From contig NC_047075.1 of NCBI RefSeq assembly GCF_902459465.1, forward strand, positions 11,222,001-11,286,000: 64,000 bases of DNA. The letters are read 5' to 3'. Numbering within the stretch: position 1 is the stretch's first letter; each line of letters opens with the position of its first letter. Origin of the DNA: Asterias rubens. Its lineage: Eukaryota. Positions 32,169-62,449 of the stretch are shown in pieces. The position numbers were made by a program, and so were the translations under genes. The notes below the pieces were generated by a model. That model made no database searches. It saw only the letters and a program-made list of their open reading frames with translations, and was not told the DNA's origin.

Positions 32169-32452
32169 TTAGCCACGAGGTGGAGAGTAACGGCGTATTT
32201 TGATTTCAGTCTTTGCAACACGAGACCCATTCCATTCACTAGCTCTAATGACTCGTTTGTATGGACCCATAGCATCACCAGGTTGTATATATTCAGCATT
32301 AAGGTTATTATCTACACCAGGTATACCAGAGCATCTATTAAACCACCATCCTCCTTCACTGTTCAGACCTGGGCAGTTTGTTGAGCCTTGGTTAATATCT
32401 TTGTGATGGCGAATGCTGAAGGCTTGATTGTTGGCAGTCTCAAGAATATTAT
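32169..32452 (-). CDS. FReD gene exon 9 (C-terminal part of the fibrinogen domain, stop)
   Basis: Acceptor ttttcag|AT; NCP..SEGGWWFNRC..NLNAEY..KTEIKIR. Confidence 0.92.
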
Positions 32453-33002
32453 CTGAAAAAACAGAGGAAAGTCTGATAATCAACATTCTTAAATACCTAA
32501 GACAGTTTGGCTATTCCTATTGGTGGAGAGCATTTCACGTGGAGTGTTTAAACAGCTGATAAAGGCACAGCTAGAGCTGTATATAACAAGTTGTTTTCGG
32601 ATAGTATTTGTGCGGGTTAGCCAAATGCTATCAGAAAACTGCCTCCAAAAAAATGCACCGCACGGTCACGACACTGCCGATTTTAAACGGCCGTTTAAGA
32701 ACTCGTCACCACTCATGTATACCCTTACTAATATTTGATGCTCATTAATTTAAAAGTTAAGTGGTTTTTTTTTCTATTAAATAACTGCACGCCTGTTATA
32801 GAATATCAGAAAATTAAAAAGTGTGAACAATTAACACGCGTCTATGGCACCACCATACACTGTTTTAAACTTGTAAACAATTTAAAGGTTTGTTTCACAC
32901 ATGTTTTTAGATCGTCTGTTTGTATGTTGTATTGCAAACAAGTAAACACCATTATCGGTTGGACTCGAAAGTTAGTAATTTAACTAAACTCGAAGAACTT
33001 AC

Positions 33003-33141
33003 TTCTGCATCCAATGAGTTCAATGCTGACAGGTTGATATTCGAAGTTTTCAGTTCGTATGATACGGATGAAGCGTGCTCGGATCGGCTGCTTCAAAATG
33101 GTGGTTAGCGGTGCGGATTCCTCCGTGTTACCATGGAATGT
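33003..33141 (-). CDS. FReD gene exon 8 (C-terminal part of discoidin module 2)
   Basis: cag|TFHGNT..QPIRARFIRI..IELIGCR|GTAAGT; 139 nt, phase 0 to 1; not in the ORF track. Confidence 0.9.
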
Positions 33142-33202
33142 CTGTAGCACAGGAGATAAACAGCATGATTACGGCCAACTTTGGTTAATTGAATAAATCG
33201 CC

Positions 33203-33543
33203 TTAAAGGCAGTGAACAAAATTGGTCATTGTCATAGATTAGCCTTCACAGTTAGTGTAACTCAACATATGCATAAAACAACAAACCTGAGAAAATTCGA
33301 GCTCAATCGGTCATCAAAGTTGCGAGATAATAATGAAAGAAGAAAACACCCTTGTCACACGAAGTTGTGTGCGTTTAGATGGTTGATTTCGTGGAAAATT
33401 ACTTCTTTCTCCAAAACTATGGCACTTCAGAGGGAGCCGTTTCTCACAATGTTTTATACCACCAACCTCTCCACATTACTTGTCACAAAGAAAGGTGTTA
33501 TGCTAATAATTATTTTGAGTATTTACCAATAGTGTCCACTGCA
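33203..33543. mobile_element. TTAA MITE family A in intron 7
   Basis: TTAA-AGGCAGTGAAC ... CCAATAGTGTCCACTGC. Confidence 0.8.
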
Positions 33544-33727
33544 TAGAAAGTAATAAAACATGAAAAGCTCATTATTGCAATGTTCCATGTACGTATGTTT
33601 TTTCTGGATTAAAGATTGTCTCTGTTTAAAACCAGTTGAGAAACAAGTCCACCAGAATCAAAATATTAATTTGAAGAACCATTTTACGTAAAGTACGTAA
33701 ACGTTGAGCAATGACACAACCATTTAC

Positions 33728-33933
33728 CTGACGTTCAGGTGCTCCATGGTGGGTTACGTTGACCCAGGTAACGTTGTCGAGACTGACATGTACTTGAAAT
33801 GACTGTGCATATTTCCCTTTAGCTATGACTCCCTCAACTAGAGTTACTAACAGTAGGTCAATCTGAAGCCGTGGTGATTCGCCAGGCATTGTATGGGCTT
33901 CCTTAAGAAGGCGTTGTGCACATACCCAGCGTA
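33728..33933 (-). CDS. FReD gene exon 7 (N-truncated discoidin module 2)
   Basis: tttacag|..LQIDL..VEGVIAKG..SFQVHVSLDNVTW..Q|GTAAAT; phase 1 to 0. Confidence 0.8.
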
Positions 33934-34258
33934 CTGTAAACAAAACATGTGACTGATTGAAAATTTGAATTGAATGCGTTGTGCTCCTGTTCTGTAAAGT
34001 TATGAGTAAATTTAGATTTTCTTAAAAAAAGGTTTATATTTAAAAAAAGAACAGTAAATGGCATCAATTAAGACATCGACTCTATAACAGGCACAGGGTC
34101 AACATTTACACAAAAATAAATCAGTTTTTAGAAAAGGAATTTTAACTGGAACAGTACTTAACTGGCATCTAAACTATGAGAGCAACTGGATTATTAATAG
34201 GCCCATTATAGAACAAATACAGCACTGGCAACCTTTAAAATTACCAACAACTTTGAGT

Positions 34259-34342
34259 AAGTATTCCGGAACTTCTGTTAAGTATTCGGGAACTTCTGTA
34301 AAGTATTCGGGAACTTCTGTAAAGTACTCGGGAACTTCTGTA
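34259..34342. repeat. Minisatellite, 4 x 21 bp (AAGTATTCGGGAACTTCTGTA)
   Basis: Direct tandem repeats; explains the KYSGTSV repeat ORF. Confidence 0.95.
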
Positions 34343-35034
34343 TTAAACAACGGTTTAACTGGTAAATTACAAACTTTTCCCCGAGCAGGACATGTAACTT
34401 ATAAACAAGCCTCAAACTTCTACCAATGTTCAATCTTTCGAGATAACGAAATTAGAAAAGTCCTACTCACTTTTATACTGCACGTACGGGGCTGGAATTA
34501 ACGGATTGATGGATGAATAATAATTTGTGATTTTAGGTGATTTTCGTGGAATTAATGGAAAACTTTGATAAAGAACATGGCGATTTATAAAGTAATTGGA
34601 ATCATGTGAAACTGGGTTGTCAATAGAGGGCGCTATAGAGGATGCATTACTACGCTCACTAATAAGAATCCGACTACTGTCTTATAATAATGCACCACAC
34701 TTACATAGGAAAGGACGTCGGAAAACCGGAAAAAGGGTTTTTACAGAGTTTCCAACTCTATTACGTCTTTGTACCAATATACTTTATTACGTGTTTTTAC
34801 CAATACCGCATGAGAGTCAAAGAGTATTGACTCGTTCTGAAGCGGCCGTTTAAAACCTTGTATGGTCGTGGCCGTACGATAAAGGCTCTCACCTTCGGCT
34901 CGGGCCTATATCGCGCGGTCACGACCCTGTCGGTTTTAAACGGCCGATTAATAACTCGTCGCTGCCCTTTTATTCCCTTTTTAAAAGTATAGTTTTTGCA
35001 AATCCAAAATTATGTCAATAGTTCTTACATATAA

Positions 35035-35180
35035 GAGATGTTTAGTCTAGTTGGTAAGATACTGCTCTAAAACTACAAGGGTCGTGGGTTCGAATTCCAC
35101 TCGAGAAACATGCCTGTGATACTTTTTTCACAAGACTCGGGAAAGTACAGTTCTAACACACATCGGTGTATGGGTAAAAA
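35035..35180 (+). mobile_element. tRNA-derived SINE
   Basis: TAGTCTAGTTGG A-box, GGTTCGAATTCC B-box; gactcgggaaagtac segment also at ~14920. Confidence 0.7.
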
Positions 35181-35388
35181 ATAAAATAATATTACTAACA
35201 TGATTATCAACAATCCAGATGAAATTATTTAATGAAATGGACTGTTTGTATTTTTGCAATGTGCTTGATTGATAATATGCACTCGTTTAAGTTTAAGATC
35301 AGAGAAAGAGACTTGTATATGAATTCAGTTTACGATTTTGTTAAATAAACGTTACATTTGAAAACGTTGTGATTTATTGAAACAATAC

Positions 35389-35527
35389 CTCTGCATCCAA
35401 TGAGTTCAATACGTAGGGATGGGTTATTAGACCATTTTGTTGGTTTGATGCGGATGTACCGTGCTTGAATAGGCTGCTGGAATATATTGGTGACTGGGGT
35501 GTATCCATCAGTGTTGCCGCTGAATGT
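35389..35527 (-). CDS. FReD gene exon 6 (C-terminal part of discoidin module 1)
   Basis: cag|TFSGNTDG..QARYIRIKPTKWSNNPSLRIELIGCR|GTATTG; 139 nt. Confidence 0.92.
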
Positions 35528-35677
35528 CTGTTAAATAATAAACCACATGTGGAGCAGTAACAAAAACAAATGGTAATTTAAACTTTGGGCCTGAATAATG
35601 GCTGTACTGCATTATTGAAGTGTTGTTTTTTAGGAATACATGTCAGGTTGGAGGGTTTATTTCCTGAGTACTCTTAC

Positions 35678-35985
35678 CTGTGGAGTAGAGGCCCCATTCA
35701 CATACATCCATGTAGTGAGTTCGATGCTGTATTGTACTTGGTAGTGTGTCACATACTGGCCTGGCCCGCCCTGTGTGATGACACCCTCAATCTGGACAGG
35801 ATTTGCACCCATATCTACTTGAAGCCACGAACCATAGAGTCGTCCCCAAGCTGGGGACCAATAACGGTCCAGGTTCAGTCGTGCATTACTCGGCGGATAC
35901 AGGTCACCCCATTTACTAGATGCTGTGATCCTATCATCGGGGATACTCCCGTCTTCCATCCCAAGTTTATGTCTACAATATACAA
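35678..35985 (-). CDS. FReD gene exon 5 (F5/8 type C/discoidin module 1)
   Basis: C..KLGMEDGSIPDDRITASS..ARLN..WLQVDMG..VITQG..YVTHYQVQYS; ttccag| acceptor, |GTAAGA donor. Confidence 0.92.
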
Positions 35986-36849
35986 CTGGAACCAAAATAT
36001 AACAAATTAAGCGATTAATTGGTGGAGTAACTATTAATGAAATAACACTAGGTTTGACATCAATGTTTGCCAGGAGGTAAATTCAACGGATGAATTTATT
36101 TTTGTCACATTTATTGCTAAATGACGGTTCTGAAACGTGTCCTTTTTAAGCAACAAAGTAACACACCCGTCAAAAAATCGCCTGTGGTAGTTTCGGTTTG
36201 TTCTTGTATTCAGGATTATATTTGTATTTATTTCACTTCTTGTTAATAAAGACAAAATACAACAATACACATTAATTATGATTAGGTTAATAACTTTTAA
36301 AAAATACAGCAAAGAGCAATTTAAATACAATAAACACAAATAAAATAAAATGTCTTTATACAAATATAAAAATATGTATGTAGTCTATATAGCGTTAGTA
36401 AAAACAAACAAGGGCATACAAGCAAGGTAAACACATAAATTATAAAACCTAAATATAAAATGAAAGCACAACAATATATAGACGATGTGACCTCTGATGT
36501 CACTCGAAAACCATAACCTGATTCCGCGCATACCAGCGGGCAAAACCTTTGTGTTTTGGCAGTCAGCTAGAAAGTGTACGCAATCTTACCATGACTACGC
36601 GTCTTTTTTGCCGGTTAAACATAACGTAAACAGTCTTTTGTCAACAGAGGGCGGTTTGAATGTAAACATAGGTCACATCGTATTATAGATAATACACATT
36701 GGCTAAACAAAGTCATGTTATGGGTGGTTTCGTGTAAAGAACTCAACGTATAGTATTTATACACCTTACTGGGGAAGTCCCTAAGCACAAGTTTTGAACA
36801 TCGGTGGAAAGTCTATCCAAAAATATTTTGAAAAAAGGTACTTAAGAGA

Positions 36850-37560
36850 GTTCGTTCTAGCAAGTCTGTGTTTGAAAACCAGTTTATCAATTGTACGTGT
36901 AATAGGTTTCGGTATAATATGAGTAGGTGTCGTTCAAGCTGACAAAAAAAAAAACATAATAGCAGAAAACGGTTGTACAAGGAGGGTAAGTGAAGTTGAG
37001 TGAGATTGTTCGTAAGTAAGGGACTCAGCAACTCTATAATGTGAAACAGGAGCGAATGAATTGTCATTGCACTGCTTCAAGGGACTGTATGTGGTGTTTC
37101 TGGTTTGGTAGCCATACATGAATACATGACGCGCTGTTTGCGCACAGAAATAAATTACTGTTCACTGAAAGAAACCATGTCGTGATCCAAAAATAATGTT
37201 GGAACTTTTAGAATGCACAATAAAATGACTAGACATAAAACGTTAAAACATCTTGCATGACCCTGAACAATAAGATATTGGACGGTAATTAGCAATATGA
37301 GAGTTATTACCTTGTTGGGGGAAGAGGAATGACATTTGCCAGCCTCCAATCTCCAGGTACTCTGCCCAATTGGATGTTGAGGTTAATAATTTTGGTAAGT
37401 ATGCCAACCAGAGACAAATCAGCAAGCAAGTATGCCATGTGAATTTTCATCTGGATGAGTTTGGATGAGTTAAGCTTACGCACCGCCTACAACACCTCAC
37501 CTTGCCTGATTTGTATAGTTTGAAGAGGGCATGGGTGCCTGGGAGATTAGAGGCTGAATC
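36850..37560 (-). mobile_element. Degenerate LINE fragments
   Basis: NYRPIS..SCKMF motif (~37250-37330) and YQTRN-type LINE 3' region. Confidence 0.55.
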
Positions 37561-38036
37561 CTGTACAGAAAAATTACTACAAAAACAAATCATTAAAAGC
37601 ATTAACAATGGAAGACGATGCGTTACATGCGTCTCATCCTGAAAACATATACAGCAGGTTAAGACTTTCTTTCAGCATTAACAAACGACCAAAAACGTTT
37701 AGGGTTACATTTCAAGTCATTGGCAACAGCTTTAAACAAATACATTTCAAGTCATTGGCAACAGCTTTAATTGAACATTTACAGCAGGTTGAGACTTCCT
37801 GCTAGCATTAACTAAACCATCAAAACCTAAACGTTTAGGGTTACATTTCAAGCCATTGGCAACAGCTTTAAACATTTGTAGATAGTTAAACTTGATTACT
37901 AAAGTTTGTCTTTAGTCAACAAATTATTGTTGTATAATAATTATATTATATGATCATATTAAATGTATGCCTTATTGTATCTGAATATAAATATAAACAG
38001 GGGAGGCCTGGTCAATACAATGCCATGTGTACATAC

Positions 38037-38298
38037 CAGATAGTTGTATCTCTGAGTTCTCCAGAAACAGTTTGTAATGGCCTGGTCCGACGTGGAACTG
38101 TTTCTTGAGAAAAGAACCCTTGGTGTTATCTTCATTAGTGAGTTCCAGACGGATTGTCCAGTTCCCCTCAGCATCAGTCAGTTTATGTAGAATCTCATTG
38201 CCAAGCCAGAACTCACCATCCATTGACCCAAAGCCATCCTTGTAATCTTCCCAACTGCGGTTGAAATTGATTGATCCATCATAACGCCGCTGGACCAC
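38037..38298 (-). CDS. FReD gene exon 4 (central fibrinogen domain)
   Basis: [37 protein letters not shown]; phase 0 to 1. Confidence 0.95.
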
Positions 38299-39098
38299 CT
38301 TGAAATAAAACAGTTACTCCATTAATTCTTTTTTTTAATCTAAAGGTGCTCAGTTTCTTAAACAAAACTCAGCTGACCTTCAAGTTTTGAAGAAAAAAAA
38401 GTGACTCAAGTTATATCAAGAACCTAGAGAAAAAAAAAATCAGTTATAAAGACTTTGGTGAAAATATTCAAATGCATATTATTTGTTTTGCATCTTTCCC
38501 ATTGTCCAGTATGATGTAACAAACGTAACAATGAATAAGATATTACAAATTATATCACAAGTGATTTTGTTTTCATTTAAACAAAAAACTAAATATTGTA
38601 TAAAATGCAGGCCACCAATAAAAAGTAGCAAGTTTGAACAACTTTTGAAATAATGTGCTTCAGCTATATGATTTAATATAATTAACAACAACAGCAATAG
38701 AATACAGATACCACATCTTTCAAAAACACACACACAAGCAATACAGAACCGAACAGGTAAGTTTTCTGGTTGGTTGTGAAGCTTCAAACAATGTTTATTA
38801 GAAGGGCATTCTACTAGAGTTATTTACTAGACATTAGTCTTTATCTGTTGCCTAGTGTAACATTAGTAAGCTTGTTTGCTGCTTGCTGCTTTGGATGCGG
38901 ATTAGCTTGGTGTTGCACGAAGGCGGGATGGTGATCGAAACGTCGAGTTGAAACCAACGGTTCTGTTCAAAACCACCCCAACTCAATTAAAGACAATCAT
39001 TACAGGTTGTTACCGCAAACCTTTCTATATCGTATTTTCACCAGGCACAGTTTCAAAATCCTACTTAATACAATCCTAATTGAGTGTGTTCTACTTAC

Positions 39099-39217
39099 AA
39101 TCCAGCCAGTATGCTTCCTCATATCACAAAACACCTCCGTTCCTTCACCTTTTTGGAAGGGATGGATAGTGTACACACCATCCTCTGTGTAACCGGCATC
39201 CAACAAGGCCTGACAGT
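39099..39217 (-). CDS. FReD gene exon 3 (start of fibrinogen domain)
   Basis: DCQALLDAGYTEDGVYTI..VFCDM..GWI|GTAAGT. Confidence 0.95.
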
Positions 39218-39819
39218 CTGGGAAATTATACATAATAATTGTGCTTAATTTAGTATAATTGAGACATTGTACGAACATTGCATCCGTGATTATTGTTCTT
39301 TTAAAACTACTATTAATCGGCGTTTTAACTTTTTGTTTTTTTGTCTCAAAGTTGTTGTAAAGAACACATTTCCGCTGAGAACAAAATCAGTAAATCAATT
39401 TCAGAAACACAGCCGTCCTTTTATCTAAATCTCATATGTGTTTATTTTCAGTTTGTTTTGTTTCAGTTTTAAACAAGTATTAGGGTCAATCCATGAACTT
39501 ATTTACTCTCTAAAGTGTTGAGTTTGATTCAACTGACGCTACGTTTGTTGTTTGTTTGTTTGTGTTTTCTCCAAATATCACAATAAAAGATCAGAGAACA
39601 TACAAGAACAAAAACAAAGGGTGATAAGAGGAGGGCCCCAGGAAAAAGCCTAGGCTTATACACATCGGTGTAATGGTAAAAAAAAAAAAAAAGTGATACT
39701 TCTAGTTCCCATTGCCAAAAAAGAATAGATTGGTTGTCTAGTGGTAATTACTATGCTCTGGCCAAGCAAAGGGCGTGAGATTGAGGCGAGTGTTTTTTTC
39801 TCATCTCAAAACCACTTAC

Positions 39820-40071
39820 CATGGAAATGGCATCCATAATGGTCATGTATCTCTTCTTGGTCATCAGTGAAGATTACTTGATCAGTGTAGATTGGTTTAG
39901 TCTTTCTTTTTGGAGCTACTTTAAACAGCCCTCCCGGTCGGATTGAGGTACATGAACACATATCCTTAAATGGTTGGATCCACCGTAGTCGGTTTCCTTC
40001 ATCTGGATCAGGTTCTTGGGTCAAGTAGCAAACTTTGGTAGAAGCTGCTTCATTGCCTTGCAGCAAATAAA
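39820..40071 (-). CDS. FReD gene exon 2 (end of signal peptide plus Cys-containing linker)
   Basis: ttgttttag| acceptor, |GTAAGT donor, 252 nt, phase 1 to 1, open frame. Confidence 0.85.
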
Positions 40072-40289
40072 CTAAAACAAGAAAAAGATACAAATAACAT
40101 TACACATTCATTGCGGTTAAATTTGAGTCATGTTCTGATATTTACAAAGTCAAGTCGATGCACAAAATGTTATAAGCTAGGAAATAATATGTCATCCTGT
40201 GATAGTTGCTTTACACCAAGATTGACAGGCTGGTGCTCTCCATCTTAGCTAACATGTCCCGTGAATTCGTGATAAAAAGAGCTCCAACT

Positions 40290-41049: not shown

Positions 41050-42300
41050 AAGCGAATCTCACAGTGGAAGTATAATATATGAAGGGGTACAAATGTCTGA
41101 CAGCCTGATCGATTGGTCAAGTGAAAAATACATTTTTTTGTTAAACCATGACATCTCAAGGTAACTTTAGACCAGAATATACACATCGCTCATCCTCACA
41201 CTAGCAACAACGAGCTGAATATTGGACTCTAGAAAAGGCCATCAAACAAAAACTGGCTTCTCTATAAGATGGATGCATTTATCCAAAAATGAAATTAATT
41301 ATTTGTTATTTGCGAACTTGGTCGGTTTGGGCATTTCATCAGAATGGCAGCCTTCTAAAAAGATCTCATCATACCTCGTCAAAGAGAACGCCATCCATTG
41401 CGCTGGGAGGACAAAGCCCAAGAGAATGTCAAAATTCAAGAGGACAATTTAAGAACAGCGGTCAGCAGTCTTCGTTATATTTTGGTAATTATTAAAAAGA
41501 ATTCAAAGGAGGTGAAGCTGCATTTCGGGATTGCCTTGTACTCCCATTATGAACTTTAGAATAGGTGTGACTTAATATATCTTTGTGCGAGAAACTAGAT
41601 GAGTTGCTGAGTTTTGCATTCGTTGGAGGGGAGCAATTCTGGATTGAGGAAGGTTGATGTAGAGACGGTTGCAATAATCGAGGTGAGATGTAGCGAAAGC
41701 ATGAACCAGTCATTCAGTGGTACCTTGATCCAAGTAGCGTCTAAGCTTTCCGATCATGTGAATTCCAAAAGCAGCGGAACGACATGTTTGATTTATTGTT
41801 GCAGGGTTAATTGGTGACCAAAGGTGACTCCAAGATCTCTAACCGTCTTTGATGGGGTGATCTTGTCTTGGACAACTGAGTTGTGTGCAATAGGTTGTGC
41901 TGTTCGGAACTGTGAGGTGACATGTAGTACTTCAGTCTTAGATGAGTTTAGCTGCAGTCCGTTAAAGCTTGACCATGTCTGAATATCAGCAACACAGTCT
42001 GATAGCTGCTCCGTGGACTCAGTGTGCTTACTCTGATTGAGTATGACGTAATAAAGCTATGTGTCGTCAGCGTACTGCGTGGTGAATATATTGATGTTCC
42101 AGTGCCAGTCTAGGGCCAGTGTAAAGGATGAAGTCCAGCGGTCCCATGGCCGATCCTTGTGGTACTCCAGACGATAGGGGAGATGGTCTTGAAAAGGAGT
42201 CATTCACATTTACAACTTGAGTCCATCCATCAAAATACGAGCTGAGTAGCTGGAAAGCAAGACCATCTATGCCATATGAACGCTTGAGCCTCTCCAAGGC
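41050..42300 (-). mobile_element. L2/CR1-group LINE remnant
   Basis: GVPQGSAMGPLDFILYT, YADDT-like motif, LQRMQNSA..VTPILK; many stops. Confidence 0.85.
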
Positions 42301-42429
42301 AACTGTTTTGGTTCATAGTGTTAGCGGGACCAGCGTTCAGTGTTGACTATCTTGTGCTAGGAGCTAGTTCGAAGCCACATAAGTGCTACTAACTTTGTGA
42401 TGACAAACGCTCAACTTAACAGTGGATCG

Positions 42430-42760
42430 AGGCAGACTTTGTGCTCAGGTGCATCAGGTTCATAAGCCCGACCGTGACGTTCTGCGTTTCCTGTGGTGAA
42501 CCGATCATGACATAAGTGGGGTTCCTAAGATGTTTCGTAGGACATCTCACTTGTTTGGAGGCATTTGGTTCCAAAGCTTTGAAACATTTCCTTTAAAGCG
42601 TACAAAACAATACAACGTGGAGGATGTTGACGCCAATACCATATACACCATAGACAACGATTTATACGTCGATGATTGCCTGAAGTCGGTCGCCTCAGAG
42701 CACGAAGCCTTCAGACTAGTCAGACAACTTCGTGAGGTTTTTGCGTCCGGTGGATTTCGG
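42430..42760 (+). mobile_element. BEL/Pao LTR-retrotransposon RT fragment
   Basis: DRDVLRFLW, HLFGG, LYVDDCLKSV..L..GGFR. Confidence 0.85.
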
Positions 42761-43779
42761 TCACGTGACGCGTATCCGCGACTATCGTATATTGCAGACA
42801 CGTTAGCAACGGATACGGGAGCTCATGCACGTCGTAGAAAAACGGATACTGTTTTGCAGACTTTTAGTTGTATTTTTGTCCAAGATCAAAAACATTTCCC
42901 ATGGAATTGCTTTCACTGGTATCGTGCTTGCTATAGATGGAAAATTGCTAGTCATTTGCAAGCAAAACGATGAGAACATGCACTGTATAAAACACGGGGT
43001 CTATATCGGTCATTTTTGTCAGAAAAAACACACTCTTAACACCCATGATGAATGCGAGCGCACTCAAGTGAATACCTATTAGTCCAGGCATTTCCTGCAA
43101 AACAATGAGTTAACCTCAGACAAATTGCAACATAAAGTCTGTAAACTGATTCATACCCAGAATAACATATCAAAACTCTTAAGCAATCCGAGTGGGGGAA
43201 AGTGTCATGGCGGCCATTTTTCGAAATGGCCGCCATAAACCCGATATTTCCCAATATCACCGCTTCTGTAATGACTTAGGGCTTTAATTTTAAGTGGTAA
43301 AAAAAAATTTTCACTGACAAGGAATCAAATGAAACGCATTTCGTATCGCTAAACCTGGTCAAAAAGCAAAAATTACCGCCAATTTCTCAAAATTACCACC
43401 AGTTTCCAAAATGGCCGCCATAAAACAGATGTTTCCCAAAATCTCCGCTTCTAAATGACTTAGGGCTTTAATTTTAAGTGCTAAACATACATTTTCTGCG
43501 GCCAAGAATCCAATGACACACGTTACAATAAGGTAAACCTGACAAAAAAAAGCACAACGATGACAGCCATTTTTCCAAAATGGCCGCAATAAAACAGACA
43601 TTTTCCTATTCTTTCCGCTTCTAAATAGGCCTAACATTGAGATTCAATTATAAGTGCTTTTGTGAGGATCCCTTCTTCTGCTTTCTAAATGAAGTGTTGT
43701 TTTAATGATGTTATTCTTCAGTTTGATTTTTCTCAATGATATTAAATGTTGCTCCCACACTGGCTGAGGTACGTTGTGC

Positions 43780-44990
43780 TATCAGGAAGCTTTTAGAACG
43801 GACCTGCTGCAGGACCTGATGGCATTCCTCACGAACTGCTCAAGTGTGCCGATAGCCCGATAAGCAAAGCCCTTCACAAACTCTTCCTCAAAGTATGGTT
43901 CCCAGGAAGGGTTCCTTCCGATTGGAGGAATGGTGTCATCATCTCCATATACTAAGGGAAAGGTCAGAAAAACCAACGCAGCAGCTACAGGCGTATTACT
44001 CTTCTCTCAGTTCATGGAGAGGTGTTCGGTCATGTGCTCATGTCTCGCCTAGAAGCTGTACTCACCCGTCACCGCCGACCCCAGTAGTCTGGTTTCACAA
44101 GGGGCCGTTCAACAATGGATGGAGTGCTCGCCCTTCGACTCCTGTACCTACGTTGCTTATGTCGACATTAAGGCAGCTTTTGACTTTATAGATCGGGAAG
44201 CCCTATGGAAAGCCCTGAAAGCAACAGGAGTTCCACCGTTTCTTCTTCACCTGGTTCAGGACTTACATGATGGCAGCCTCTACCGTGCGTGTTGGCAACG
44301 ACATCTCCTGTCCCTTCCTTCAGCACCTCCGCGGTGTTCGCCGAGGCTGTGCCTGGCCCAAGCCCTATTTTGCTGTGCCATTGACTGGGTACTAAATCGC
44401 CGGCGGGCTGATCTCGGCATAATGGCTGGAGAAATGTCCTTTACCGACCTAGCCCACGCTGACGATGCCGCCCTGTTCGCAAGAGAGCCTAATAAGTGAC
44501 CTACCAAGCTCCATAAGTTCGAGGAAGGAAGCTGGGACAATGGCTTTACAAGATCAAGATGAGTGGTCCTATCAAGATCCAAAACTGCGCCGCCTTAAAC
44601 CACCTTCCGCCCCAGCGTCTGTACAGGGCCAGCCTGTCGAGACCACAGATAAGTTCAGATATCTCGACTGCGAAATATGTTCTGAAGGTCAGTCTTCTCC
44701 CGACATCCATCGACGACTCGAGCTTGCCTTTTCAACCTGTACACTTTTGGTTGAAGATGGACGTAGGCTTCAAGCATTTGACGCCAGATGCCAACAGTGG
44801 ATACTCGGTGTCCGTTGGTCAGGCTTAATCTCAAACGAGTCATTTTTGGAAACCACCGGTCTTGAGGACATTCCGTGTGACCATCTCACCGCGACGCCAC
44901 TCCCTCTTTCCTCCTTGGCCACGTCCGTCGGCTTCCAGAAGACACTCCAGCACACGCCGCCCCCAAGCTGAGCGTCAATGCTCGGTTGGG
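43780..44990 (+). mobile_element. RTE-clade LINE remnant nested inside the inverted-arm element
   Basis: YR.ITLLSV, YVDIKAAFD.IDREALW, DLAHADDAAL, VE..DKFRYL; frameshifted. Confidence 0.88.
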
Positions 44991-45029
44991 GGGGGGGGGT
45001 CCTCGGTCCTGGCCAAGCCTAGAAGAGAC

Positions 45030-45530
45030 CCAGAGGGCATCCACGCAACACCTGGTTGATGAACATGCTGCCCTCTACAAGAACCAGATGGAAGGTTCTA
45101 CAGAGGAGTTCTGCCAAGCTGATGTGTTATCCAGGATCGAGGAGCTCCTCAGGGCCAAACCAAATCATTTAAGTCATTTAGGACTGCCACGCACTAACTA
45201 CAGTATATGGATATGGTGGATATACTACGGAAGTTTGTCAGAGAAGAGCGCTTTGGCAACTGGGCGTTGCACATTGACGCTGTGTCAGAAATGCTGCGCT
45301 ATCTGGCAGCTTCTGGGCACAATCCCTACACCAAATCAGCCTACCTCTGTGTGCATCGGATGAGCAAGCTCAAGGACGAACGTCAAGATGTATACCTACG
45401 ATTTGAAGAAGGGTTATATCTTTTCAGAAGAAGTGATCGCCTTTGGACTGGTCTGTCCGTAGATCTCACTATCGAAAAGGTTCTGATGAGGGAAGACCAG
45501 CGGTGGCCTGATGAGAGGGCGAGGCATATG
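45030..45530 (+). pseudogene. Transposase fragment resembling Academ-type proteins
   Basis: YMDMVDILRKFVREERFGNWALH..GHNPYTKSA..RRSDRLWTGLSVDLTIEKVLMR; family assignment from recalled motif only. Confidence 0.6.
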
Positions 45531-46078
45531 ACGAGGTGTATTAAAATGATTGACACTTCCTCAGAATATGCTTGTTGGTCAAGTTTAGCTTGTGAAAACT
45601 GGTATGATTTGATTCCTGGCCCCAGAAAATGTTTGTCTAGCACTAAAAGTTAAAGCCCAGTGTCATTTAGAAGCGGAGATAATTGGAAATATCTGTTTTA
45701 TGGCGGCCATTTTGAAAATGGCCGCCATGTATTTTTTGGCAAGGTTTAACTTTACAAAATGCGTTTCACTTGATTCCCAGTCAGTGAAAATGTATGTTTA
45801 GCACTTACAATTTAAGCCCTTAGTCATTTAGAAGCGAAGCTTTTGGAAACAATTCGGGTTTGGGCGGCCATTTTTTAAAAATTACCGCCATGACACTTTC
45901 CCCCATTCGGATTGCTTAAGAGTTTTGATATGTTATAGAGGACAAAATTCTGAGTATGAAACAGTTTACAGACTTGATGTTGCAATTTGTCCGAGGTCAT
46001 ATCAAATTATGCCTTGACTATATAGTTTGCGAAACAAAATGCAACACGCGGCTGCTGACGTGAACGGATATGGTTATC

Positions 46079-49000
46079 AGTAGTGTGTAAGGCGTATATG
46101 ACCTCCTTTTTTTTAAGGTGGATCATGATCCACAGGTCGTGTGGATCATGGCTCGAGTGGGTCGTTGTAAGTAGATTGCCAAATGGGGGTGTGACGAAGA
46201 CCCCCCCTTTTTTTGTTTTTTACCAAGACAGTAAGTGGGAAGGTCAAAGTGTAAGACTCCATAGTTAATAATATGATACGCTGTTGAGTATTAGTCTAAT
46301 TTAAAGATCAGGTAGGAATTTGATTTGTTTGTGTATAGTGGAAATAACCCCCCCCCCCCCATATCGGTCAAGAATGTACGAGTCCGATAGTTCTGTTGTC
46401 GTCTGCTACGTTTTAATCATGTTCGAACTTGCTCTCAGTTGCCGGACCGGACAACAAAGACAACCGAGTGGAAGGCCCAATTATATGTACGTAGGGTATG
46501 TTTCTGTGGAGTAATACAAGTGCACCCATACAGGTTCGACTTATTTAAAGTTTTCTGGTGGTCGGTGTACACTTTGAAGACTACATCATTCGTCTTGGAT
46601 CGTCTCACTGATATTAACATGGAGTCGAAGCGTCTTGGACCCGTACAGGTAAAGGTCTCGTGTCCGATTTGTGGGAAGAGCTTTTCGCGTAGCGACAATA
46701 TGAAACGACACCGACAGACACACAAGCACCCCAGTATCGGAAGCCAATCGAAAGCTTGTCCCAGTTGTGATAAGGTGTTTTCCACTTCCTATAATTTGAA
46801 GAAACACCTTCAAAATCATAAGGAGAATGAGGAGGAGGAGGAGGAGGGGGACCTCCACGAAGATGCTAGTGGCGAATCCACAGAAGAGGAGGATTCTGAA
46901 GACGAGGACGTGGAGTGGGAGGAGCTTCATGTAGACGATGGTGATGAACCAACAGATGATGATGATGATGATTTTGAAAATGAAGACGTGATGGAGGAGG
47001 GGGACGACCGTGAACATGATGATAGTGATGGACTTACAGATGATGATGGCCTTGAAAATGAAGGAGATGAGGAGGAGGAGGAGGAGGAGGAGGCGTTTCT
47101 TGAAGACGATAGTGATGAATCAACAGATGATAACATTTATGAAAGCGAAGAAATTGAGGAGGAGGAGGAGGAGGAGGGATTATGTGAAGACGATAGTGAC
47201 GAATCAATGGAAGATGACTATTTTGAAGATGAAGAGGAGTCGGAGAAGGAAGATGACGATAGTGATTTATTAACAGACGACAGTGCTTATGAAAATGAAG
47301 AGGAGGACAGCGGGAGACGTCCAACGAAAATACTTAATTTTTCGATAAAGAATGCTAAACTTATTATGTTTAAATGATGATTTTTTTTTTTTTTTTTTTT
47401 TTTTTCTTTCAATCCTACACGCCCAAGATTGTATTGTTTGAATAATAATACAGAACAGTATTATCAACGGAGGTTTGTTAAAGCATAATATTCTATCAAC
47501 TGTAAATACTAAGAGGGCTTGAATAAGTGAACTCGTCACACATAAAAAGAAAAAAAAAAAAAAAAAAAAAAAACATGATGAGTAAAAACATATTAATTAA
47601 CTAAATAAATTAATAAACAAATAATAAAATAAATATACTGTTAATGTCTTTCCTTAAGTTTTCAAAATAGGCGGGCGCGGGTCGCTGGGGTCTAATCAAG
47701 CACCTGCATGCGAACGAAGTTCATTCGACAGATTTCAAAGTTCTTGTCATAAATGGGGGGGGGGGTCATCATGTACAATTAATTTAAGTATTGTGGCGGT
47801 TATAAGCAGATGTTAATGGAGTGTTATATACAGAATAAATGTGTTGTTGTTGTTTTTGGGGTCAAAAAGTGATAACCTTTGTGTTTGTTTTTGTGTATAC
47901 TTGTTTTCTCTGCAGTCCCTTTTGGCAAAGGTAAACAGACCCTGTCCGAGCGATGGTGGTACATGATGTGGGCATGGAGTTATAGAAAACAAAGATAGCT
48001 CCACGGTATGGGGGAACAAGAACTGACACGTTTGGCTGGTAGACCAATCAGTTGTGACGTCATATATTGACTACCAGATGGGTTACTGATCAAGGATCAT
48101 CGCGGGTTGTGTACATGAAGTGAAGGCCACGGGCAATAATGGTTACAGATTAGGATAATATTAGATTATATTGTCACACTTTACTCCATTACTATTAATT
48201 TAACGTTTAATCTTCACATAAAACGGGGGGGGGTATGACCATTTTCAGAAACCTAGGATATACGCGGCAATTTAATTAGTCCGTACAGAGCATAATATGG
48301 TACGTACACATAATTGGGTTTTCCGCTCAGGTATTTGTTGGCCGGTCCGACAATTAAGGGCAAGTTCGAACACTATAAAAAAAAAAAAAGTGGGGAAAAA
48401 GGGACAGCGTCTAAATGTAAAACAAACTAAGCATGTCACCTTTTTTTCTCGATGCCTAACTCGGTTGTACCCACACGTTGGGGCTCTTATTTATTAAAAT
48501 TAGTGTAGATCACTGGTGTTGTCGTCAAAAGTAAAATCGTTCGATGTATACAAACAAAAAACACGACCGTGTTTATATATCGTCGGTCTTTGGTTGTGAC
48601 GCTATATTGCGTTTCGTATGTTATACTTATTTATTAGATAGGCCTAAAGTTATAACAGTATTATTTATTTGACATTTTCAAATACAGTGTAATATATGTA
48701 TACAATATCTTAACCTAAACAAACCAAGGGTTATTTTTATTATAATTATAATTATTGGTTTATTAAAAATGTAAACATATGGATGTCAAAAAGCCGAATT
48801 GCGGATGCAACGATACAAAGAGTAAACAAAACCATTATTCGACTAATACATTTGATACTCAAATAATGGTTCGTGGTGGCGTTCCTACAGAATTGTTTTT
48901 CTTCTTATCTTTTTAGAAACAAAGGATATAATTAATGCAATGCACTTGTATTACTCCACAGAAACATACCCTACGTACATATAATTGGGCCTTCCACTCG

Positions 49001-49381
49001 GTTGTCTTTGTTGTCCGGTCCGGCAACTGAGAGCAAGTTCGAACACGATTAAAACGTGGCAGACGACAACAGAACTATCGGACTCGTACATTCTTGACCG
49101 ATTGGGGGGGGGGGGGTATTTCCACTATAAACAAACAAATCAAATTCCTACCTGATCTTTAAATTAGACCAATACTCAACAGCGTATCATATTATTAACT
49201 ATGGAGTCTTACACTTTGACCTTCCCACTTACTGTCTTGGTAAAACAAAAAAAGGGGGGGTCTTCGTCACACCCCCATTTGGCAATCTACTTACAACGAC
49301 CCACTCGAGCCATGATCCACACGACCTGTGGATCATGATCCACCTTAAAAAAAGGAGGTCATATACGCCTTACACACTACT
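46079..49381. mobile_element. Miniature Polinton/Maverick-type element (3303 bp)
   Basis: AGTAGTGTG..CACACTACT ends, TIRs 46079-46524 and 48941-49381, 6-bp TSD GTTATC at 46073-46078 and 49382-49387. Confidence 0.85.
46619..47377 (+). CDS. Two-C2H2-zinc-finger protein with a long acidic tail (252 aa from the ATG at 46619)
   Basis: aacATGg start; CPICGKSFSRSDNMKRHRQTH and CPSCDKVFSTSYNLKKHLQNH; uninterrupted D/E-rich region; intronless. Confidence 0.85.
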   Translation: MESKRLGPVQVKVSCPICGKSFSRSDNMKRHRQTHKHPSIGSQSKACPSCDKVFSTSYNLKKHLQNHKENEEEEEEGDLHEDASGESTEEEDSEDEDVEWEELHVDDGDEPTDDDDDDFENEDVMEEGDDREHDDSDGLTDDDGLENEGDEEEEEEEEAFLEDDSDESTDDNIYESEEIEEEEEEEGLCEDDSDESMEDDYFEDEEESEKEDDDSDLLTDDSAYENEEEDSGRRPTKILNFSIKNAKLIMFK

Positions 49382-49706
49382 GTTATCGTATCCGTATCTG
49401 TATCTGTATCCGTACGATTGCAAAACCTCTCTAAATAATTTGTTGTCGCGACTTTAACACTAATAAAGCACACTAGTCGCCACCGCTTACTTTTGCACAA
49501 GTAAAATGCATGGTTATCCTGCGAATGCAAATCAAATTTTTAAGTCACTGTTTTCGCAGTAAAAGTTTCGCAGAAGTTGAGCACAATTCGTCAACTGATA
49601 CAAATTTGTTTATGCGAGTTGTGACGCTCAAGAACACATTCCCTGCTAAGCTATAAGTTGCTAAGCACAATTCCCTGATTATACGTAAGCGCTGCAATTA
49701 TTTTCT

Positions 49707-51165: not shown

Positions 51166-51253
51166 TTAGGGCGTTATAACGCCGTAAAATTACGGCGTTA
51201 TAACGCCCTAATTTAGGGCGTTATAACGCCGTATAGGGCGTTATAACGCCCTA
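51166..51253. repeat. Array of four 14-bp palindromes GGCGTTATAACGCC
   Basis: Copies at 51170, 51194, 51217, 51237. Confidence 0.95.
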
Positions 51254-59422: not shown

Positions 59423-60757
59423 CGGAGTATTTTGCCTTATTGTTGATTAAACACCACATTACTTGTATTGTGCTTTGCTGCAAAAGCATGTTTAGCAAGA
59501 GTTGTATCGACTATAACTCTTAAAAGAGTTATAGTCGATACAGTACCCATTGCTACAGTATCGGATGAAGCTTGGTCGTAGCGGTACTGTACCATTTCAA
59601 CAAAATAATCAAATGTCTTTCTGGAAACGTAATGGTAACGTAGAAGTGGACGTCCTGTACGCATAGCTTTCACCGGTCTCTCGTTGGCCATTTTGTGGAT
59701 GAGTCAAATACATTTAAGCCGGAACCGCATCCATACTATTTCAACGTCTTTGACCTTTGCCATCGTCAATATGTCATCAATTGGAACAAGTCCATTCCAA
59801 ATGATCCTGAAATATTTGCCAGGTGACGAATTTAGACTGGTCTTAATGGTAGTGTGCGGTGTTGGTGTTGGTGTTGGTACAGTGTTGTTACAGTCTCGCA
59901 TCCATACATTTAAGGCAGTTGACACTATTGGTGCTTACTCAAAATAATTATAATCATGAAACCTTACTTGGTAACCAGTCAATGGGAACTGATGATAGTA
60001 TAAAACAATGTAAGGAACGGGTATTACTGAAGTAACGTAGTTTTAGAGAAAGAAGTAATTTTCATCGAATTTGATTTCAATACCTCATAATTAGATTTTG
60101 AGGTCTCCAAATCAAGCATCTGAAAGCACAAGGGTGTTTTTCTGTCATTACTATCTCGCAACTTCGACGACAAATTGAGCTCAAATTGTCACAGGGTTGT
60201 TTGTTATTTTGTTTGATGCGTGAGTTGTTGCTTACGATTGTGTTGCTGAGATTTGAGTAACCTTTTCAGAATAGTTGTGACGAAGTGGCAGCTGGTAGTT
60301 GAGTTCGCAGAGATATTGGATGACCCAGCGTTGATTACAGAAATTGACCGAAAGTTGACCCTTGGGGTTGACGAGTAGCCAATCATTATCAGTTGAGTAG
60401 TCTAGCTAATTTGGAGACTTGAATAGAGACACAGCAAAACAATGGGCGTGCCAGCGCGTGCACGTTGGTTGATTAACTGGCTAAATGCATACTGGATGGG
60501 TCCTGCAAAGAGTGCACTCGGGAAGACATGATTTATTATAAGAAATTTTAAAAGGCTTCGTTTAAGCATAACGAGAAGAACTGTTATTTCCACTATATAA
60601 TGAAAAAGTGAGTTGCCCAGGAGGCATTAAAGAAGATTGCACGAGGGCAATCAAAGTTCATCACGCATAACTTTGTATTTAGTCGCATTATTTATGTTCT
60701 CCCAACCCCAGTAAAAATATATCAAACCTTGTTCCCCAGTTGAAACGGTTAAAATCT

Positions 60758-61013
60758 AAGATTATAGAGCGTCGCAAGGCGCAAGATGCGGAACTGAAGC
60801 TTTATCTATCTGTTGGAACGTGAAATACGCATGGGCGCCATTTCAGCAAGTGAATATTTTGTTTCCCATTGATAGGAATGGTCATTGTCTGCACTGAACT
60901 GCACTGATCTATTGTTGTATCACACAAGAGTTACTTGCCGAAATGGCATCCAGTGGGATTTCACATTTTAGCCCGAGTTCCGCATCTTGCGCCTTGCGGC
61001 GCTCTATAATCTT
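60758..61013. mobile_element. MITE with ~38-bp TIRs (GATTATAGAGCG.CGCAAGGCGCAAGATGCGGAACT)
   Basis: Near-perfect inverted arms. Confidence 0.7.
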
Positions 61014-61649
61014 TGGTCAAAATGCTTTGGCAAAATCTACAAACGCGATGTACATGTGTCGCCTTTGTTCTCTGGGTTTTTATTTTCTTCCAACAATTGA
61101 CATGAAGTGCAATCTCCATCGACTGGGCTTTTGTCGGTTCTGTTTTCTGGCTGAAATTGTGGTTGTATTGGTTTAAGGACCCTTTGAAGGTGTTGAAGCA
61201 ATAATATGTCGACACAATATTTACAAACCACGCCCAGGAGAGAGATGCTGTAGTGAATTCCTTGGAGAATAAATAAAGCTTTCTCTGTGCACAAAAGACG
61301 CACGCTTTTGTTCCCTTCTTCTTTTAAAAACTGCTGAGGTGTTACGACTACGAGGGGCACATAGCACCGTCAGCTCTGGTCAGAGAAGGTCTCGATTATT
61401 GAGACAGTTTTATTCGCTACTATTTCATTTAGCCAATGTGGCAGGTTTGGACTTGGCTTGGTGGTGTCTGCCCCTCACAGTGAAGAATCTGCGCATTGGT
61501 TAAAGTTGAAAGTAATATATATTAATTATTATTAACTAGTAATTATCCCGCCTAGGCAGTTGCAGTCATTTTCCCACAACTTCAGGCCTCGGCATTTGCA
61601 GGCCAATCTAATTTAAGTTGGTTGTAAAGTTATAAAATTACCTAACTCT

Positions 61650-61900
61650 TACCACAAAAACACATCTGTAGTTGTCACAAAGACTTAGCTCCTTTCTTAT
61701 AGAGGATCGACATGTTTCAATTGTTGCGGTCAGCAGGGATGTTCTCCTTCAACCACATGTCATTGAATACTTAGTGTATGTGCCTAATCATGACATCTCC
61801 TCCATTCGTTAATCTTCCAGTTGCTATGCCATTTGGCACAGGGCTTCTGTTACACTTCGTCCTCTTCCGGAGCTATAATCTTCGGGTATTTTATTTGAAT
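61650..61900 (-). mobile_element. RTE-like LINE fragment
   Basis: VFNDMWLKENIPAD...SILYKKG.K...NYR, with stops. Confidence 0.6.
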
Positions 61901-62094
61901 TGTATTAAATCTGCCATGTACATTATTAATTGTTATATTGCTATAAAATAAATTACCTTTGTGCATATAATCGCTGGTTAGGTTTCACATGTCCTTGTCA
62001 TGTTTGTGTGCGTTAGTTCCTTTTCGACATTATTTTGAATTAGTCGCACGTAACAATTATGCCCAAACAATGTAACGGAAGGGTTCATTTATAT

Positions 62095-62449
62095 TTAAAG
62101 CCATTGGACCCCTTCGGTAAACAGTGTTGTCCAAGGCCCACACTTTGTGTACCACAACTTCTATGTCAAATAACAAACCTGTGAAAATTTAGGCTCAATC
62201 GGTCATCGGAGTCGGGAGAAAACAACGGAAAATCCCACCCTTGCTTTTCGCCGCGTCATGACATGTGTTTAAAATAAATCCGTCCGAGAATTTATATTGT
62301 TTTGCTGTTTTCTCAAAAAGTAAAGCATTTCATGGAATAATATTTCAAGAGAAGTCTTCCACCATTGCCTTCTGTAAACCCTGTAAGTTGTTTGTAAATC
62401 TGTGAACTTGTTTTTTGTTTTCTGAACCGAAAGGGTCCAATGGCTTTAA
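62095..62449. mobile_element. TTAA MITE family B, complete
   Basis: TIRs AGCCATTGGACCC.TTCGG, TTAA both sides. Confidence 0.9.

What the first reader, a model, noticed from the sequence alone, without database searches (positions are those of the whole stretch)
46073..49387. A 3.3-kb 'mini-Maverick' with intact ends whose cargo is a zinc-finger/acidic gene rather than replication machinery
Seen: 446- and 441-bp TIRs differing by about 4 substitutions plus homopolymer slips, 5'-AGTAGT termini, an exact 6-bp TSD (GTTATC), and no pPolB, integrase, ATPase, protease or capsid ORF. Established: Polintons/Mavericks have long TIRs, AG..CT ends with short terminal repeats and 6-bp TSDs, but are usually 15-20 kb. 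Inference: a recently integrated non-autonomous satellite or defective form, mobilised in trans by a full Maverick/adintovirus, that keeps one apparently intact regulatory gene. It could be a helper-dependent parasite or modulator rather than a random deletion product. It inserted beside a GTATCY hexamer run in intron 1 of an immune-type gene.
Basis: partly seen in the sequence, partly recalled or inferred. Interest (0 to 1): 0.88.

Follow-up and report, generated by a model that had tools for sequence, protein, structure and literature searches.

The report
Gene-poor mini element with Maverick-type ends
A 3.3-kb insertion carries the exact end signature of Maverick/Polinton virus-like transposons but none of their genes, only one intact zinc-finger/acidic ORF. 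It is most likely a defective derivative, and nothing here shows it to be a working helper-dependent satellite.

Summary
The element is 46079-49381 (3303 bp). Its inverted ends are 446 and 441 bp and differ by 4 substitutions plus 5 single-base indel columns. The termini are AGTAGT/ACTACT and the target duplication is an exact 6-bp GTTATC.

Published surveys give this same triad, (AGT)2//(ACT)2 ends, 6-bp duplication and TIRs of about 400 bp, as the signature of vertebrate Mavericks. The other 6-bp-duplication superfamily has TA..TA ends. So a Maverick-type origin of the ends is well supported.

The interior has no Maverick protein remnant. It holds one intact 252-codon ORF with two C2H2 fingers and a 180-residue acidic tail.

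The satellite or modulator reading is not supported:
- No second copy and no polymerase/integrase partner could be found. The host genome is not in any searchable collection.
- The only two relatives are short metagenome contigs. They carry the gene without this TIR, so the left TIR/cargo boundary is a sharp rearrangement junction.
- In both relatives similarity stops part-way through the ORF.
- Coding changes show no detectable constraint (13 non-synonymous to 5 synonymous, p=0.26).
- Placement in "intron 1 of an immune gene" is unconfirmed.

Whether the element moved as a mini or was deleted in place is unresolved.

The parts
46073..46078 (.). Left copy of the 6-bp target-site duplication, GTTATC
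   Evidence: Read directly; identical to 49382-49387.
46079..46524 (+). Left terminal inverted repeat, 446 bp, starting AGTAGT = (AGT)2
   Evidence: pairs with 48941-49381 with 4 substitutions and 5 indel columns. End motif as described for Mavericks in PMC8097293.
46124..46150 (.). Subterminal perfect 11-bp-stem hairpin/palindrome inside the TIR, mirrored at 49311-49337. Possible protein-binding site (inference).
   Evidence: (D8) and 61: DNA fold z = -3.25, with only 1 of 200 shuffles folding as well.
46619..47377 (+). Intact 252-codon ORF. ATG lies in the context AACATGG and the stop is TGA. The protein has two classical C2H2 fingers and then a 180-residue tail that is 54% Asp+Glu.
   Evidence: zf-C2H2 E=3e-14, two stretches; PDB hits are generic C2H2 DNA-binding fingers, residues 13-70; 97 D+E in the 180-residue tail, 10 CK2-type sites, no LxCxE.
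46655..46819 (+). The two C2H2 zinc fingers (residues 13-67). All eight Cys/His ligands are present and the inter-finger linker is atypically long.
   Evidence: CxxC at residues 15 and 47; HxxxH at 31 and 63.
46823..47307 (+). Acidic tail built from about five diverged 84-87-bp (28-29 aa) tandem units
   Evidence: families D1-D3; period 84, 77-82% matches.
47381..47409 (.). T run directly after the stop codon. It pairs as an inverted repeat with the A run at 47544-47573.
   Evidence: (I7-I11).
47544..47573 (.). A run, partner of the T run. AATAAA/ATTAAA signals follow at 47604, 47612 and 47623.
47434..47915 (.). Non-coding interior segment 'B'. In the two metagenomic relatives it lies upstream of the zinc-finger gene in the opposite orientation.
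   Evidence: L001 1-185 is the reverse complement of 47725-47915 (90.6%); L002 14-187 is the reverse complement of 47434-47616 (78%) and L002 4-35 that of 47623-47654.
48267..48381 (.). Diverged (75-82%) extra copy of the innermost ~117 bp of the TIR, in the orientation of the right TIR
   Evidence: (D5, D7, I4, I6).
48941..49381 (-). Right terminal inverted repeat, 441 bp, ending ACTACT = (ACT)2
49382..49387 (.). Right copy of the 6-bp target-site duplication, GTTATC
49388..49411 (.). Host flank: four GTATCY hexamers. Together with ACGGATA in the left flank they make the pre-insertion site a 7-nt-arm palindrome nearly centred on the duplicated hexamer.
   Evidence: megablast extends the inverted match into the flanks, 46064-46078 against 49395-49382.

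Best explanation
This is a defective, gene-poor derivative of a Maverick/Polinton virus-like transposon. Shown: it has two Maverick-type ends, namely 446/441-bp TIRs that terminate in the (AGT)2/(ACT)2 repeat, flanked by a 6-bp target duplication. Inferred from the literature: that repeat serves the 'jumping-back' step of protein-primed replication, and the 6-bp duplication is the footprint of a retrovirus-like integrase. The element encodes neither enzyme, so the polymerase and integrase that made this insertion came either from a then-complete parent or from another Maverick in the cell. Shown: the 2.4-kb interior is not a piece of Maverick coding sequence. It holds one intact ORF (two C2H2 fingers plus an acidic tail) and about 1.5 kb of non-coding DNA. 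The left TIR/cargo boundary at 46524 is a sharp rearrangement junction, because two related sequences continue leftwards into different DNA. Inferred: an internal deletion or template switch joined the TIR to a unit that already carried the zinc-finger gene. The relatives place the segment downstream of the gene (47434-47915) upstream of it in inverted orientation. This fits an ancestor with much longer inverted arms (about 1.95 kb) around a central zinc-finger gene, a 'snap-back' style mini-genome, from which this copy lost the inner left arm. Inferred: the insertion is young, with 0.9% substitution divergence between the arms. The zinc-finger ORF has the build of a DNA-binding protein with an acidic effector tail. 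There is no evidence yet that it is expressed, conserved or acts on a helper.
For: End signature: set against PMC8097293 and against the 6-bp duplication and long TIRs given for Polintons in PMC8969392, PMC3014272 and PMC10748475. The rival 6-bp-duplication superfamily is excluded by its termini. No mobility genes. No RNA genes. The ORF is real and intact. Rearrangement junction: both relatives start matching at window 46524, which is also the last paired base of the TIR, and they share about 58 bp to its left with each other but not with the window. Inverted placement of 47434-47915 in the relatives. Youth: 4 substitutions in 441 bp.
Against: No element encoding pPolB or integrase with these TIRs was found, and no second copy either. 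The Maverick assignment therefore rests on cis features only. By definition Polintons encode pPolB and integrase (PMC5499653, abstract), so this cannot be filed as a Polinton proper. The (AGT)2 motif is documented in the paper read here for vertebrates, and the host of this window is unknown. The letters also allow CAG..CTG ends with a 4-bp duplication. The long-arm ancestor rests on two short metagenome contigs (784 and 921 bp) that could be chimeric assemblies.
Confidence: 0.65

Rival explanations
1. This is a member of a multi-copy, helper-dependent non-autonomous family. It was integrated as a 3.3-kb unit, or a slightly longer long-armed one, by enzymes supplied in trans. Its zinc-finger/acidic gene is a functional regulator of helper or host.
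For: Both ends are complete and 99% alike, yet no trace of any core gene remains in a young insertion. About 1.5 kb of non-coding DNA next to a TIR is unlike a compact Maverick genome. The gene occurs in at least two further related sequences, with inverted flanking DNA that suggests a palindromic mini-element. The ORF is intact, in the start context AACATGG, with downstream AATAAA/ATTAAA signals. Adintoviruses do carry zinc-binding, CK2-site-rich accessory genes near one end.
Against: No second TIR-bearing copy was found anywhere. The relatives do not share the TIR/gene junction. Their similarity to the ORF covers only 42% and 16% of it. The 13 non-synonymous and 5 synonymous changes do not differ from neutrality (p=0.26), and the upstream non-coding DNA is at least as conserved as the coding part. 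The ORF has no LxCxE and no CR1-like motif, so it is not an 'Oncoid'. Maverick size appears constrained near 17 kb.
Confidence: 0.15
2. This is a one-off in-situ remnant. A full-length Maverick of about 15-20 kb was inserted here, and one large deletion, from the inner edge of the left TIR to just upstream of an accessory zinc-finger gene near the right end, later removed all core genes.
For: A single deletion explains the sharp left junction at 46524 with a 1-nt overlap. It also explains why relatives carry the gene with other upstream DNA. In vertebrates 96% of Maverick loci are degraded. No second copy was seen.
Against: It requires that the 2.4 kb next to the right TIR of a working Maverick be mostly non-coding. 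It does not explain why the relatives have the downstream segment inverted upstream of the gene. Absence of other copies is uninformative because the host genome could not be searched.
Confidence: 0.3
3. This is not Maverick-related at all. It is a non-autonomous cut-and-paste DNA transposon of another superfamily, or a foldback-type element, whose ends resemble the Maverick motif by chance. One possibility is CAG..CTG ends with a 4-bp TTAT duplication.
For: There is no Maverick protein or partner. The terminal letters allow a 4-bp reading. Long internally repetitive TIRs also occur in other families, such as Galileo of the P superfamily (abstract listed).
Against: The exact hexamer (AGT)2, a 6-bp duplication and a TIR of about 445 bp together match the published Maverick signature. 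IS3EU/GingerRoot ends are TA..TA or TG..CA, Ginger1 makes 4-bp and Ginger2 4-5-bp duplications, and piggyBac has 4-bp duplications with CC..GG ends. The 4-bp reading needs two extra coincidences.
Confidence: 0.1

Closest known systems
Maverick/Polinton elements (adintovirus-like endogenous viruses) of animals, as surveyed by Barreat & Katzourakis 2021 (PMC8097293)
   Same: 5'-(AGT)2//(ACT)2-3' end motif, perfect 6-bp target duplication, and TIR length (446/441 bp against a reported mean of 402 +/- 276 bp).
   Different: 3.3 kb instead of 12.7-24.6 kb. None of the eight core genes is present (pPolB, integrase, ATPase, protease, two capsid proteins, PZ, PW). The interior is mostly non-coding with one C2H2/acidic ORF.
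Internally deleted non-autonomous derivatives of DNA transposons in general, and degraded Maverick loci (96% of vertebrate loci)
   Same: It keeps the cis-acting ends and lacks the enzymes. It has a sharp internal junction consistent with a deletion or recombination.
   Different: Reported degraded Mavericks are mostly mutated full-length fossils. A young, end-perfect 3-kb form with a non-core gene is hardly described in the open literature searched: one search found one passing phrase. From my own memory, untested here, Repbase lists a few 'Polinton-N' families.
Adintovirus 'Oncoid' accessory genes (Starrett et al. 2021, PMC8502044)
   Same: A small accessory ORF with zinc-coordinating CxxC pairs and many casein-kinase-2-type acidic sites, lying close to one end of the element.
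   Different: It has no LXCXE and no CR1-like motif. The zinc sites are ordinary C2H2 fingers. There is no sequence similarity to any viral protein in the searches run.
IS3EU/GingerRoot DNA transposons
   Same: 6-bp target duplication and terminal inverted repeats.
   Different: Their termini are TA..TA (sometimes TG..CA), whereas this element has AG..CT.
Snap-back or long-inverted-arm defective genomes of protein-primed linear replicons (a comparison from general knowledge, not tested here)
   Same: The relatives suggest that one terminal region is duplicated in inverted orientation around a short unique centre.
   Different: This is only inferred from two short contigs. The window copy itself has short arms (446 bp) and an asymmetric interior.

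Membership tests
Maverick/Polinton | 6-bp target-site duplication | tested here: met
   GTTATC at 46073-46078 and 49382-49387. Criterion from PMC8969392 and PMC8097293.
Maverick/Polinton | Long terminal inverted repeats (about 50-1500 bp) | tested here: met
   446 and 441 bp, with 4 substitutions between them.
Maverick/Polinton | Conserved short tandem end motif, (AGT)2//(ACT)2 or (AG)3//(CT)3 | tested here: met
   AGTAGT...ACTACT. Motif as stated in PMC8097293.
Maverick/Polinton | [quoted passage not shown] | tested here: not met
   The 10 longest interior ORFs (49-85 aa) have no Pfam match better than E=0.13, and the only coding sequence is a C2H2 ORF. It is therefore not a Polinton proper, at most a non-autonomous derivative.
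Maverick/Polinton | Virion module (major and minor capsid proteins, packaging ATPase, adenain-like protease) and a size near 17 kb | tested here: not met
   3303 bp with no such ORFs.
Non-autonomous family mobilised in trans | Several copies of like structure at different sites with different duplications | not testable with these tools
   There is no other copy in the 64-kb window. The TIR is absent from IMG/VR and JGI metagenomes, and TIR-derived ORFs are absent from the protein collection. The host genome itself is not searchable.
Non-autonomous family mobilised in trans | An autonomous partner with matching ends in the same genome | not testable with these tools
   Same searches as in the row above. 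No Maverick gene lies in the window.
IS3EU/GingerRoot | TA..TA (or TG..CA) termini with a 6-bp duplication | tested here: not met
   The termini are AG..CT. Criterion from PMC10045372.
Adintovirus 'Oncoid' accessory proteins | LXCXE Rb-binding motif followed by a CK2 site, next to paired CXXC | tested here: not met
   0 LxCxE, 0 CR1-like motifs, 10 CK2-type sites and 2 CxxC. Criteria from PMC8502044.
Classical C2H2 zinc-finger proteins | C-x2-C ... H-x3-H fingers matching the Pfam zf-C2H2 model | tested here: met
   PF00096 at E=3e-14 with two fingers. The best PDB matches are designed and natural C2H2 DNA-binding fingers.

The most novel reading that the evidence does not exclude
This copy belongs to a family of helper-dependent mini-Mavericks. 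In this reading they are long-armed 'snap-back' mini-genomes made from one terminal region of a Maverick, with its replication and integration ends on both sides. They keep a single functional zinc-finger/acidic gene that acts on the helper's or the host's transcription. That would make them a satellite or hyperparasite of an animal virus-like transposon.
Probability: 0.12. Interest if true: 0.8.

Novelty: new variant of a known kind. Interest (0 to 1): 0.4.

Why it matters
Mavericks/Polintons are usually described as 15-20-kb elements of constrained size. Short end-perfect derivatives are barely documented in the open literature. A young 3.3-kb form shows that Maverick-type ends can persist around non-core cargo, and possibly be integrated that way. 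If a family of such forms exists, it would indicate helper-dependent parasitism within this virus-like class, and it would show that their ends alone suffice in cis. On present evidence this is one defective copy with an orphan zinc-finger ORF. That makes it useful as a marker of recent Maverick activity in this genome and as a lead, not a demonstrated new system.

Tried and rejected
1. A 24-nt terminal TIR pattern gave 0 hits in IMG/VR and 0 in JGI metagenomes.
2. Degenerate-pattern searches with the zinc-finger protein in the same two collections gave pattern hits, but none was confirmed.
3. I used the protein collection as a proxy for DNA, with two ORFs read out of the TIR (46305-46511 and 49131-49385). 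No candidates came back.
4. An exact look-up of the 252- and 312-residue ORF products found neither on record.
5. The protein search with the ORF gave only three hits. Two are close (P0001 and P0002, on contigs L001 and L002) and one is a generic zinc finger.
6. Rfam and tRNA scans of 45.0-50.5 kb found nothing meaningful.
7. I searched for a paralogous empty site for the flanks within the window. The left-flank repeat stops about 80 bp short of the insertion, so there is none.
8. I tested the left TIR against the upstream parts of L001 and L002 for remote similarity and found none. The relatives therefore do not simply carry a diverged TIR there.
9. Retrocopy idea (ORF plus A run): rejected. 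The A run pairs with a T run directly after the stop codon, and no flanking direct repeats were seen.
10. 'Oncoid' idea: rejected on motif content.
11. Kapitonov & Jurka 2006 could not be read because it is not held.
12. Not used: the representative-protein scan and structure prediction. A two-finger C2H2 plus a disordered acidic tail would return only generic matches.
Full report
OBSERVATION.
- Repeat finding and blastn show two inverted arms, 46079-46524 (446 bp) and 48941-49381 (441 bp).
- A global alignment of the arms has 4 substitutions (three transitions and one transversion) and 5 single-base indel columns, mostly in homopolymer runs.
- The element starts AGTAGT and ends ACTACT. GTTATC lies immediately outside both ends, at 46073-46078 and 49382-49387.
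- The element proper is therefore 46079-49381, 3303 bp.
- The 25-nt terminal sequence occurs nowhere else in the window, even with 3 mismatches allowed, against 0 expected from shuffles.
- Four GTATCY hexamers follow the right duplication.
- One ambiguity exists. The duplication ends in C and begins with G, so the letters can also be read as CAG..CTG ends with a 4-bp TTAT duplication. That reading needs more coincidences and matches no superfamily I could name.

INTERIOR.
- The only genuine coding sequence is an ORF from the ATG at 46619 to the stop at 47375-47377 (252 codons, start context AACATGG).
- Pfam finds two C2H2 fingers (E=3e-14). PDB sequence matches are generic C2H2 DNA-binding fingers over residues 13-70.
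- The remaining 180 residues are 54% Asp+Glu. They are built from about five diverged 84-87-bp units.
- A T run follows the stop codon directly and pairs with an A run 134 nt on. Poly(A) signals follow at 47604, 47612 and 47623.
- The rest, 47378-48940, is AT-rich. The ten longest of its 19 stop-to-stop ORFs of 38 aa or more (49-85 aa) have no Pfam hit better than E=0.13. There is no Rfam family and no tRNA.
- A diverged copy (75-82%) of the innermost ~117 bp of the TIR lies at 48267-48381, in right-TIR orientation.
- Each TIR carries a perfect 11-bp-stem hairpin about 45 nt from the end.

WHAT KIND OF ENDS.
- Barreat & Katzourakis 2021 (PMC8097293) surveyed hundreds of vertebrate genomes. [quoted passage not shown]
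- They also report perfect 6-bp duplications, TIRs of 46-1447 bp (mean 402 +/- 276) and sizes of 12.7-24.6 kb. They link the end repeats to the jumping-back step of protein-primed replication.
- Other papers give the same 6-bp duplication and long TIRs.
- The present element has the motif, the duplication length and a typical TIR length.
- Among other groups with 6-bp duplications, IS3EU/GingerRoot end in TA..TA or TG..CA. Ginger1 makes 4-bp and Ginger2 4-5-bp duplications, and piggyBac makes 4-bp duplications with CC..GG ends (PMC10045372).
- I therefore accept that the ends are of Maverick type (about 0.75).
- By definition a Polinton encodes pPolB and an integrase (PMC5499653 abstract). This element does not, so it can only be called a derivative.

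RELATIVES.
- The host genome is not in any collection I could search. The terminal TIR pattern is absent from IMG/VR and JGI metagenomes.
- The ORF protein finds nothing there either. Two ORFs read from the TIR find nothing in the 5.8-billion-protein collection. The exact ORF product is not on record.
- The ORF protein has only two close relatives, P0001 and P0002. Both are singletons on short ENA marine-metagenome contigs, L001 (784 bp) and L002 (921 bp).
- At DNA level they are 93% and 98% identical to the window.
- Both begin to match at window base 46524, which is also the last paired base of the left TIR.
- To the left of that point they share about 58 bp with each other and nothing with the window or its TIR.
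- The junction is sharp, with a 1-nt overlap. The left TIR/cargo boundary is therefore a rearrangement breakpoint specific to the window copy, and the observed TIR length may be set by that event.
- Further upstream the relatives carry, in reverse orientation, DNA that lies downstream of the gene in the window: 47725-47915 in L001, and 47434-47616 plus 47623-47654 in L002.
- The simplest reading is an ancestor in which the zinc-finger gene sat between long inverted arms. Each arm would hold the 446-bp end plus the present 47434-48940, about 1.95 kb in all. The window copy would then have lost the inner left arm.
- This is inference from two short contigs that could be mis-assembled.

IS THE GENE MAINTAINED?
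- Similarity of the relatives to the ORF covers only 42% and 16% of it, after which each continues in unrelated sequence.
- Over the shared codons there are 13 non-synonymous and 5 synonymous differences against L001 (dN/dS 0.61) and 2 to 1 against L002.
- The L001 counts do not differ from the neutral expectation (binomial p=0.26).
- The 95 bp of upstream non-coding DNA are at least as conserved as the coding part: 96% against 94% for L001, and 99% against 97.5% for L002.
- The ORF is intact here, but there is no sign of constraint.
- It lacks the LXCXE and CR1-like motifs that define adintovirus 'Oncoid' accessory genes. It does have 10 CK2-type sites and zinc-binding CxxC pairs.

CONTEXT.
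- Fibrinogen-related and F5/8-type-C exons lie on the minus strand at 32.1-40.1 kb. Paralogous fibrinogen-related exons lie at 15.3-17.6 kb. None lies above 40.1 kb.
- The element is thus at least 6 kb upstream of the signal-peptide-like first coding ORF, and 'intron 1' is unconfirmed.
- LINE reverse-transcriptase debris fills 42-45 kb.
- The pre-insertion site is a small palindrome, ACGGATA ... TATCCGT, nearly centred on the duplicated hexamer. That fits a symmetric integrase complex but could be chance.

MECHANISM.
- Shown: Maverick-type ends, a 6-bp duplication, no enzymes, one intact zinc-finger/acidic ORF, and a sharp left junction.
- Inferred: an rve-type integrase inserted a linear DNA with these ends. 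The enzymes came from a complete parent or from a helper.
- Inferred: an internal deletion or template switch produced the present interior.
- Inferred: the 0.9% arm divergence implies a recent insertion if the arms were identical at integration.
- Whether the DNA that integrated was already short cannot be told from one copy. I give about 0.3 to an in-situ deletion and about 0.15 to a true helper-dependent family with a functional gene. The remainder goes to a short but functionless defective form or to a non-Maverick transposon (0.1).

NOVELTY AND SCORE.
- Deletion derivatives are ordinary for transposons, and most Maverick loci are degraded.
- Short, end-perfect Maverick derivatives with non-core cargo are nearly absent from the open literature searched. 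From memory, untested, Repbase lists a few non-autonomous Polinton families.
- I rate this a new variant of a known kind, with interest 0.4.

DECLARED SLIP. The motif patterns used were taken from the paper read.

Noticed in passing
window 46064-46078 and 49382-49395: The pre-insertion target is a small palindrome (ACGGATA ... TATCCGT, 7-nt arms) almost centred on the duplicated GTTATC. It may reflect a symmetric integrase target preference, or it may be chance next to the GTATCY run.
   Followed up: partly
window 46124-46150 and 49311-49337: Each TIR holds a perfect 11-bp-stem hairpin, overlapping a 16-nt palindrome, about 45 nt from the terminus. It is a candidate protein-binding or origin feature.
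   Followed up: partly
window 47381-47409 and 47544-47573: A T run right after the ORF's stop codon and an A run 134 nt downstream form an inverted pair with matching flanks. The origin is unexplained; it could be a small foldback insertion or a 3'-UTR structure.
   Followed up: no
window 2879-8431: A 2.78-kb unit is repeated in tandem at 99.8% identity. Each copy holds a 149-aa ORF (3239-3688 and 6013-6462, minus strand) of unknown nature.
   Followed up: no
window 21655-24766 and 26978-30071; 25267-27095 and 59841-64000: Large direct duplications (96-99% identity) lie on both sides of the 500-N gap at 24767-25266. They suggest a segmental duplication or an assembly issue around the gap. The gap was left untouched.
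   Followed up: no
window 32169-40093 (minus strand); also 15259-17571: A host gene combines fibrinogen-related and F5/8-type-C (discoidin) domains and has a signal-peptide-like first ORF. Paralogous fibrinogen-related exons lie about 20 kb away. This looks like a lectin-type, possibly immune, gene family.
   Followed up: partly
window 42067-45653: A GC-rich (up to 54%) patch holds broken reverse-transcriptase ORFs (RVT_1, weak hit) and another transposon-like ORF, so it looks like old retroelement debris. Part of it (45572-45997) is an inverted 77% copy of 43113-43549.
   Followed up: partly
window 51166-51250: A 23-bp tandem repeat of 3.8 copies whose unit is itself palindromic.
   Followed up: no
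L002 48-563: The database protein P0002 does not translate from its contig with the standard or bacterial code, because there is a stop near its first third. Its N-terminal part is therefore a read-through artefact of gene calling, not evidence for a longer protein.
   Followed up: partly
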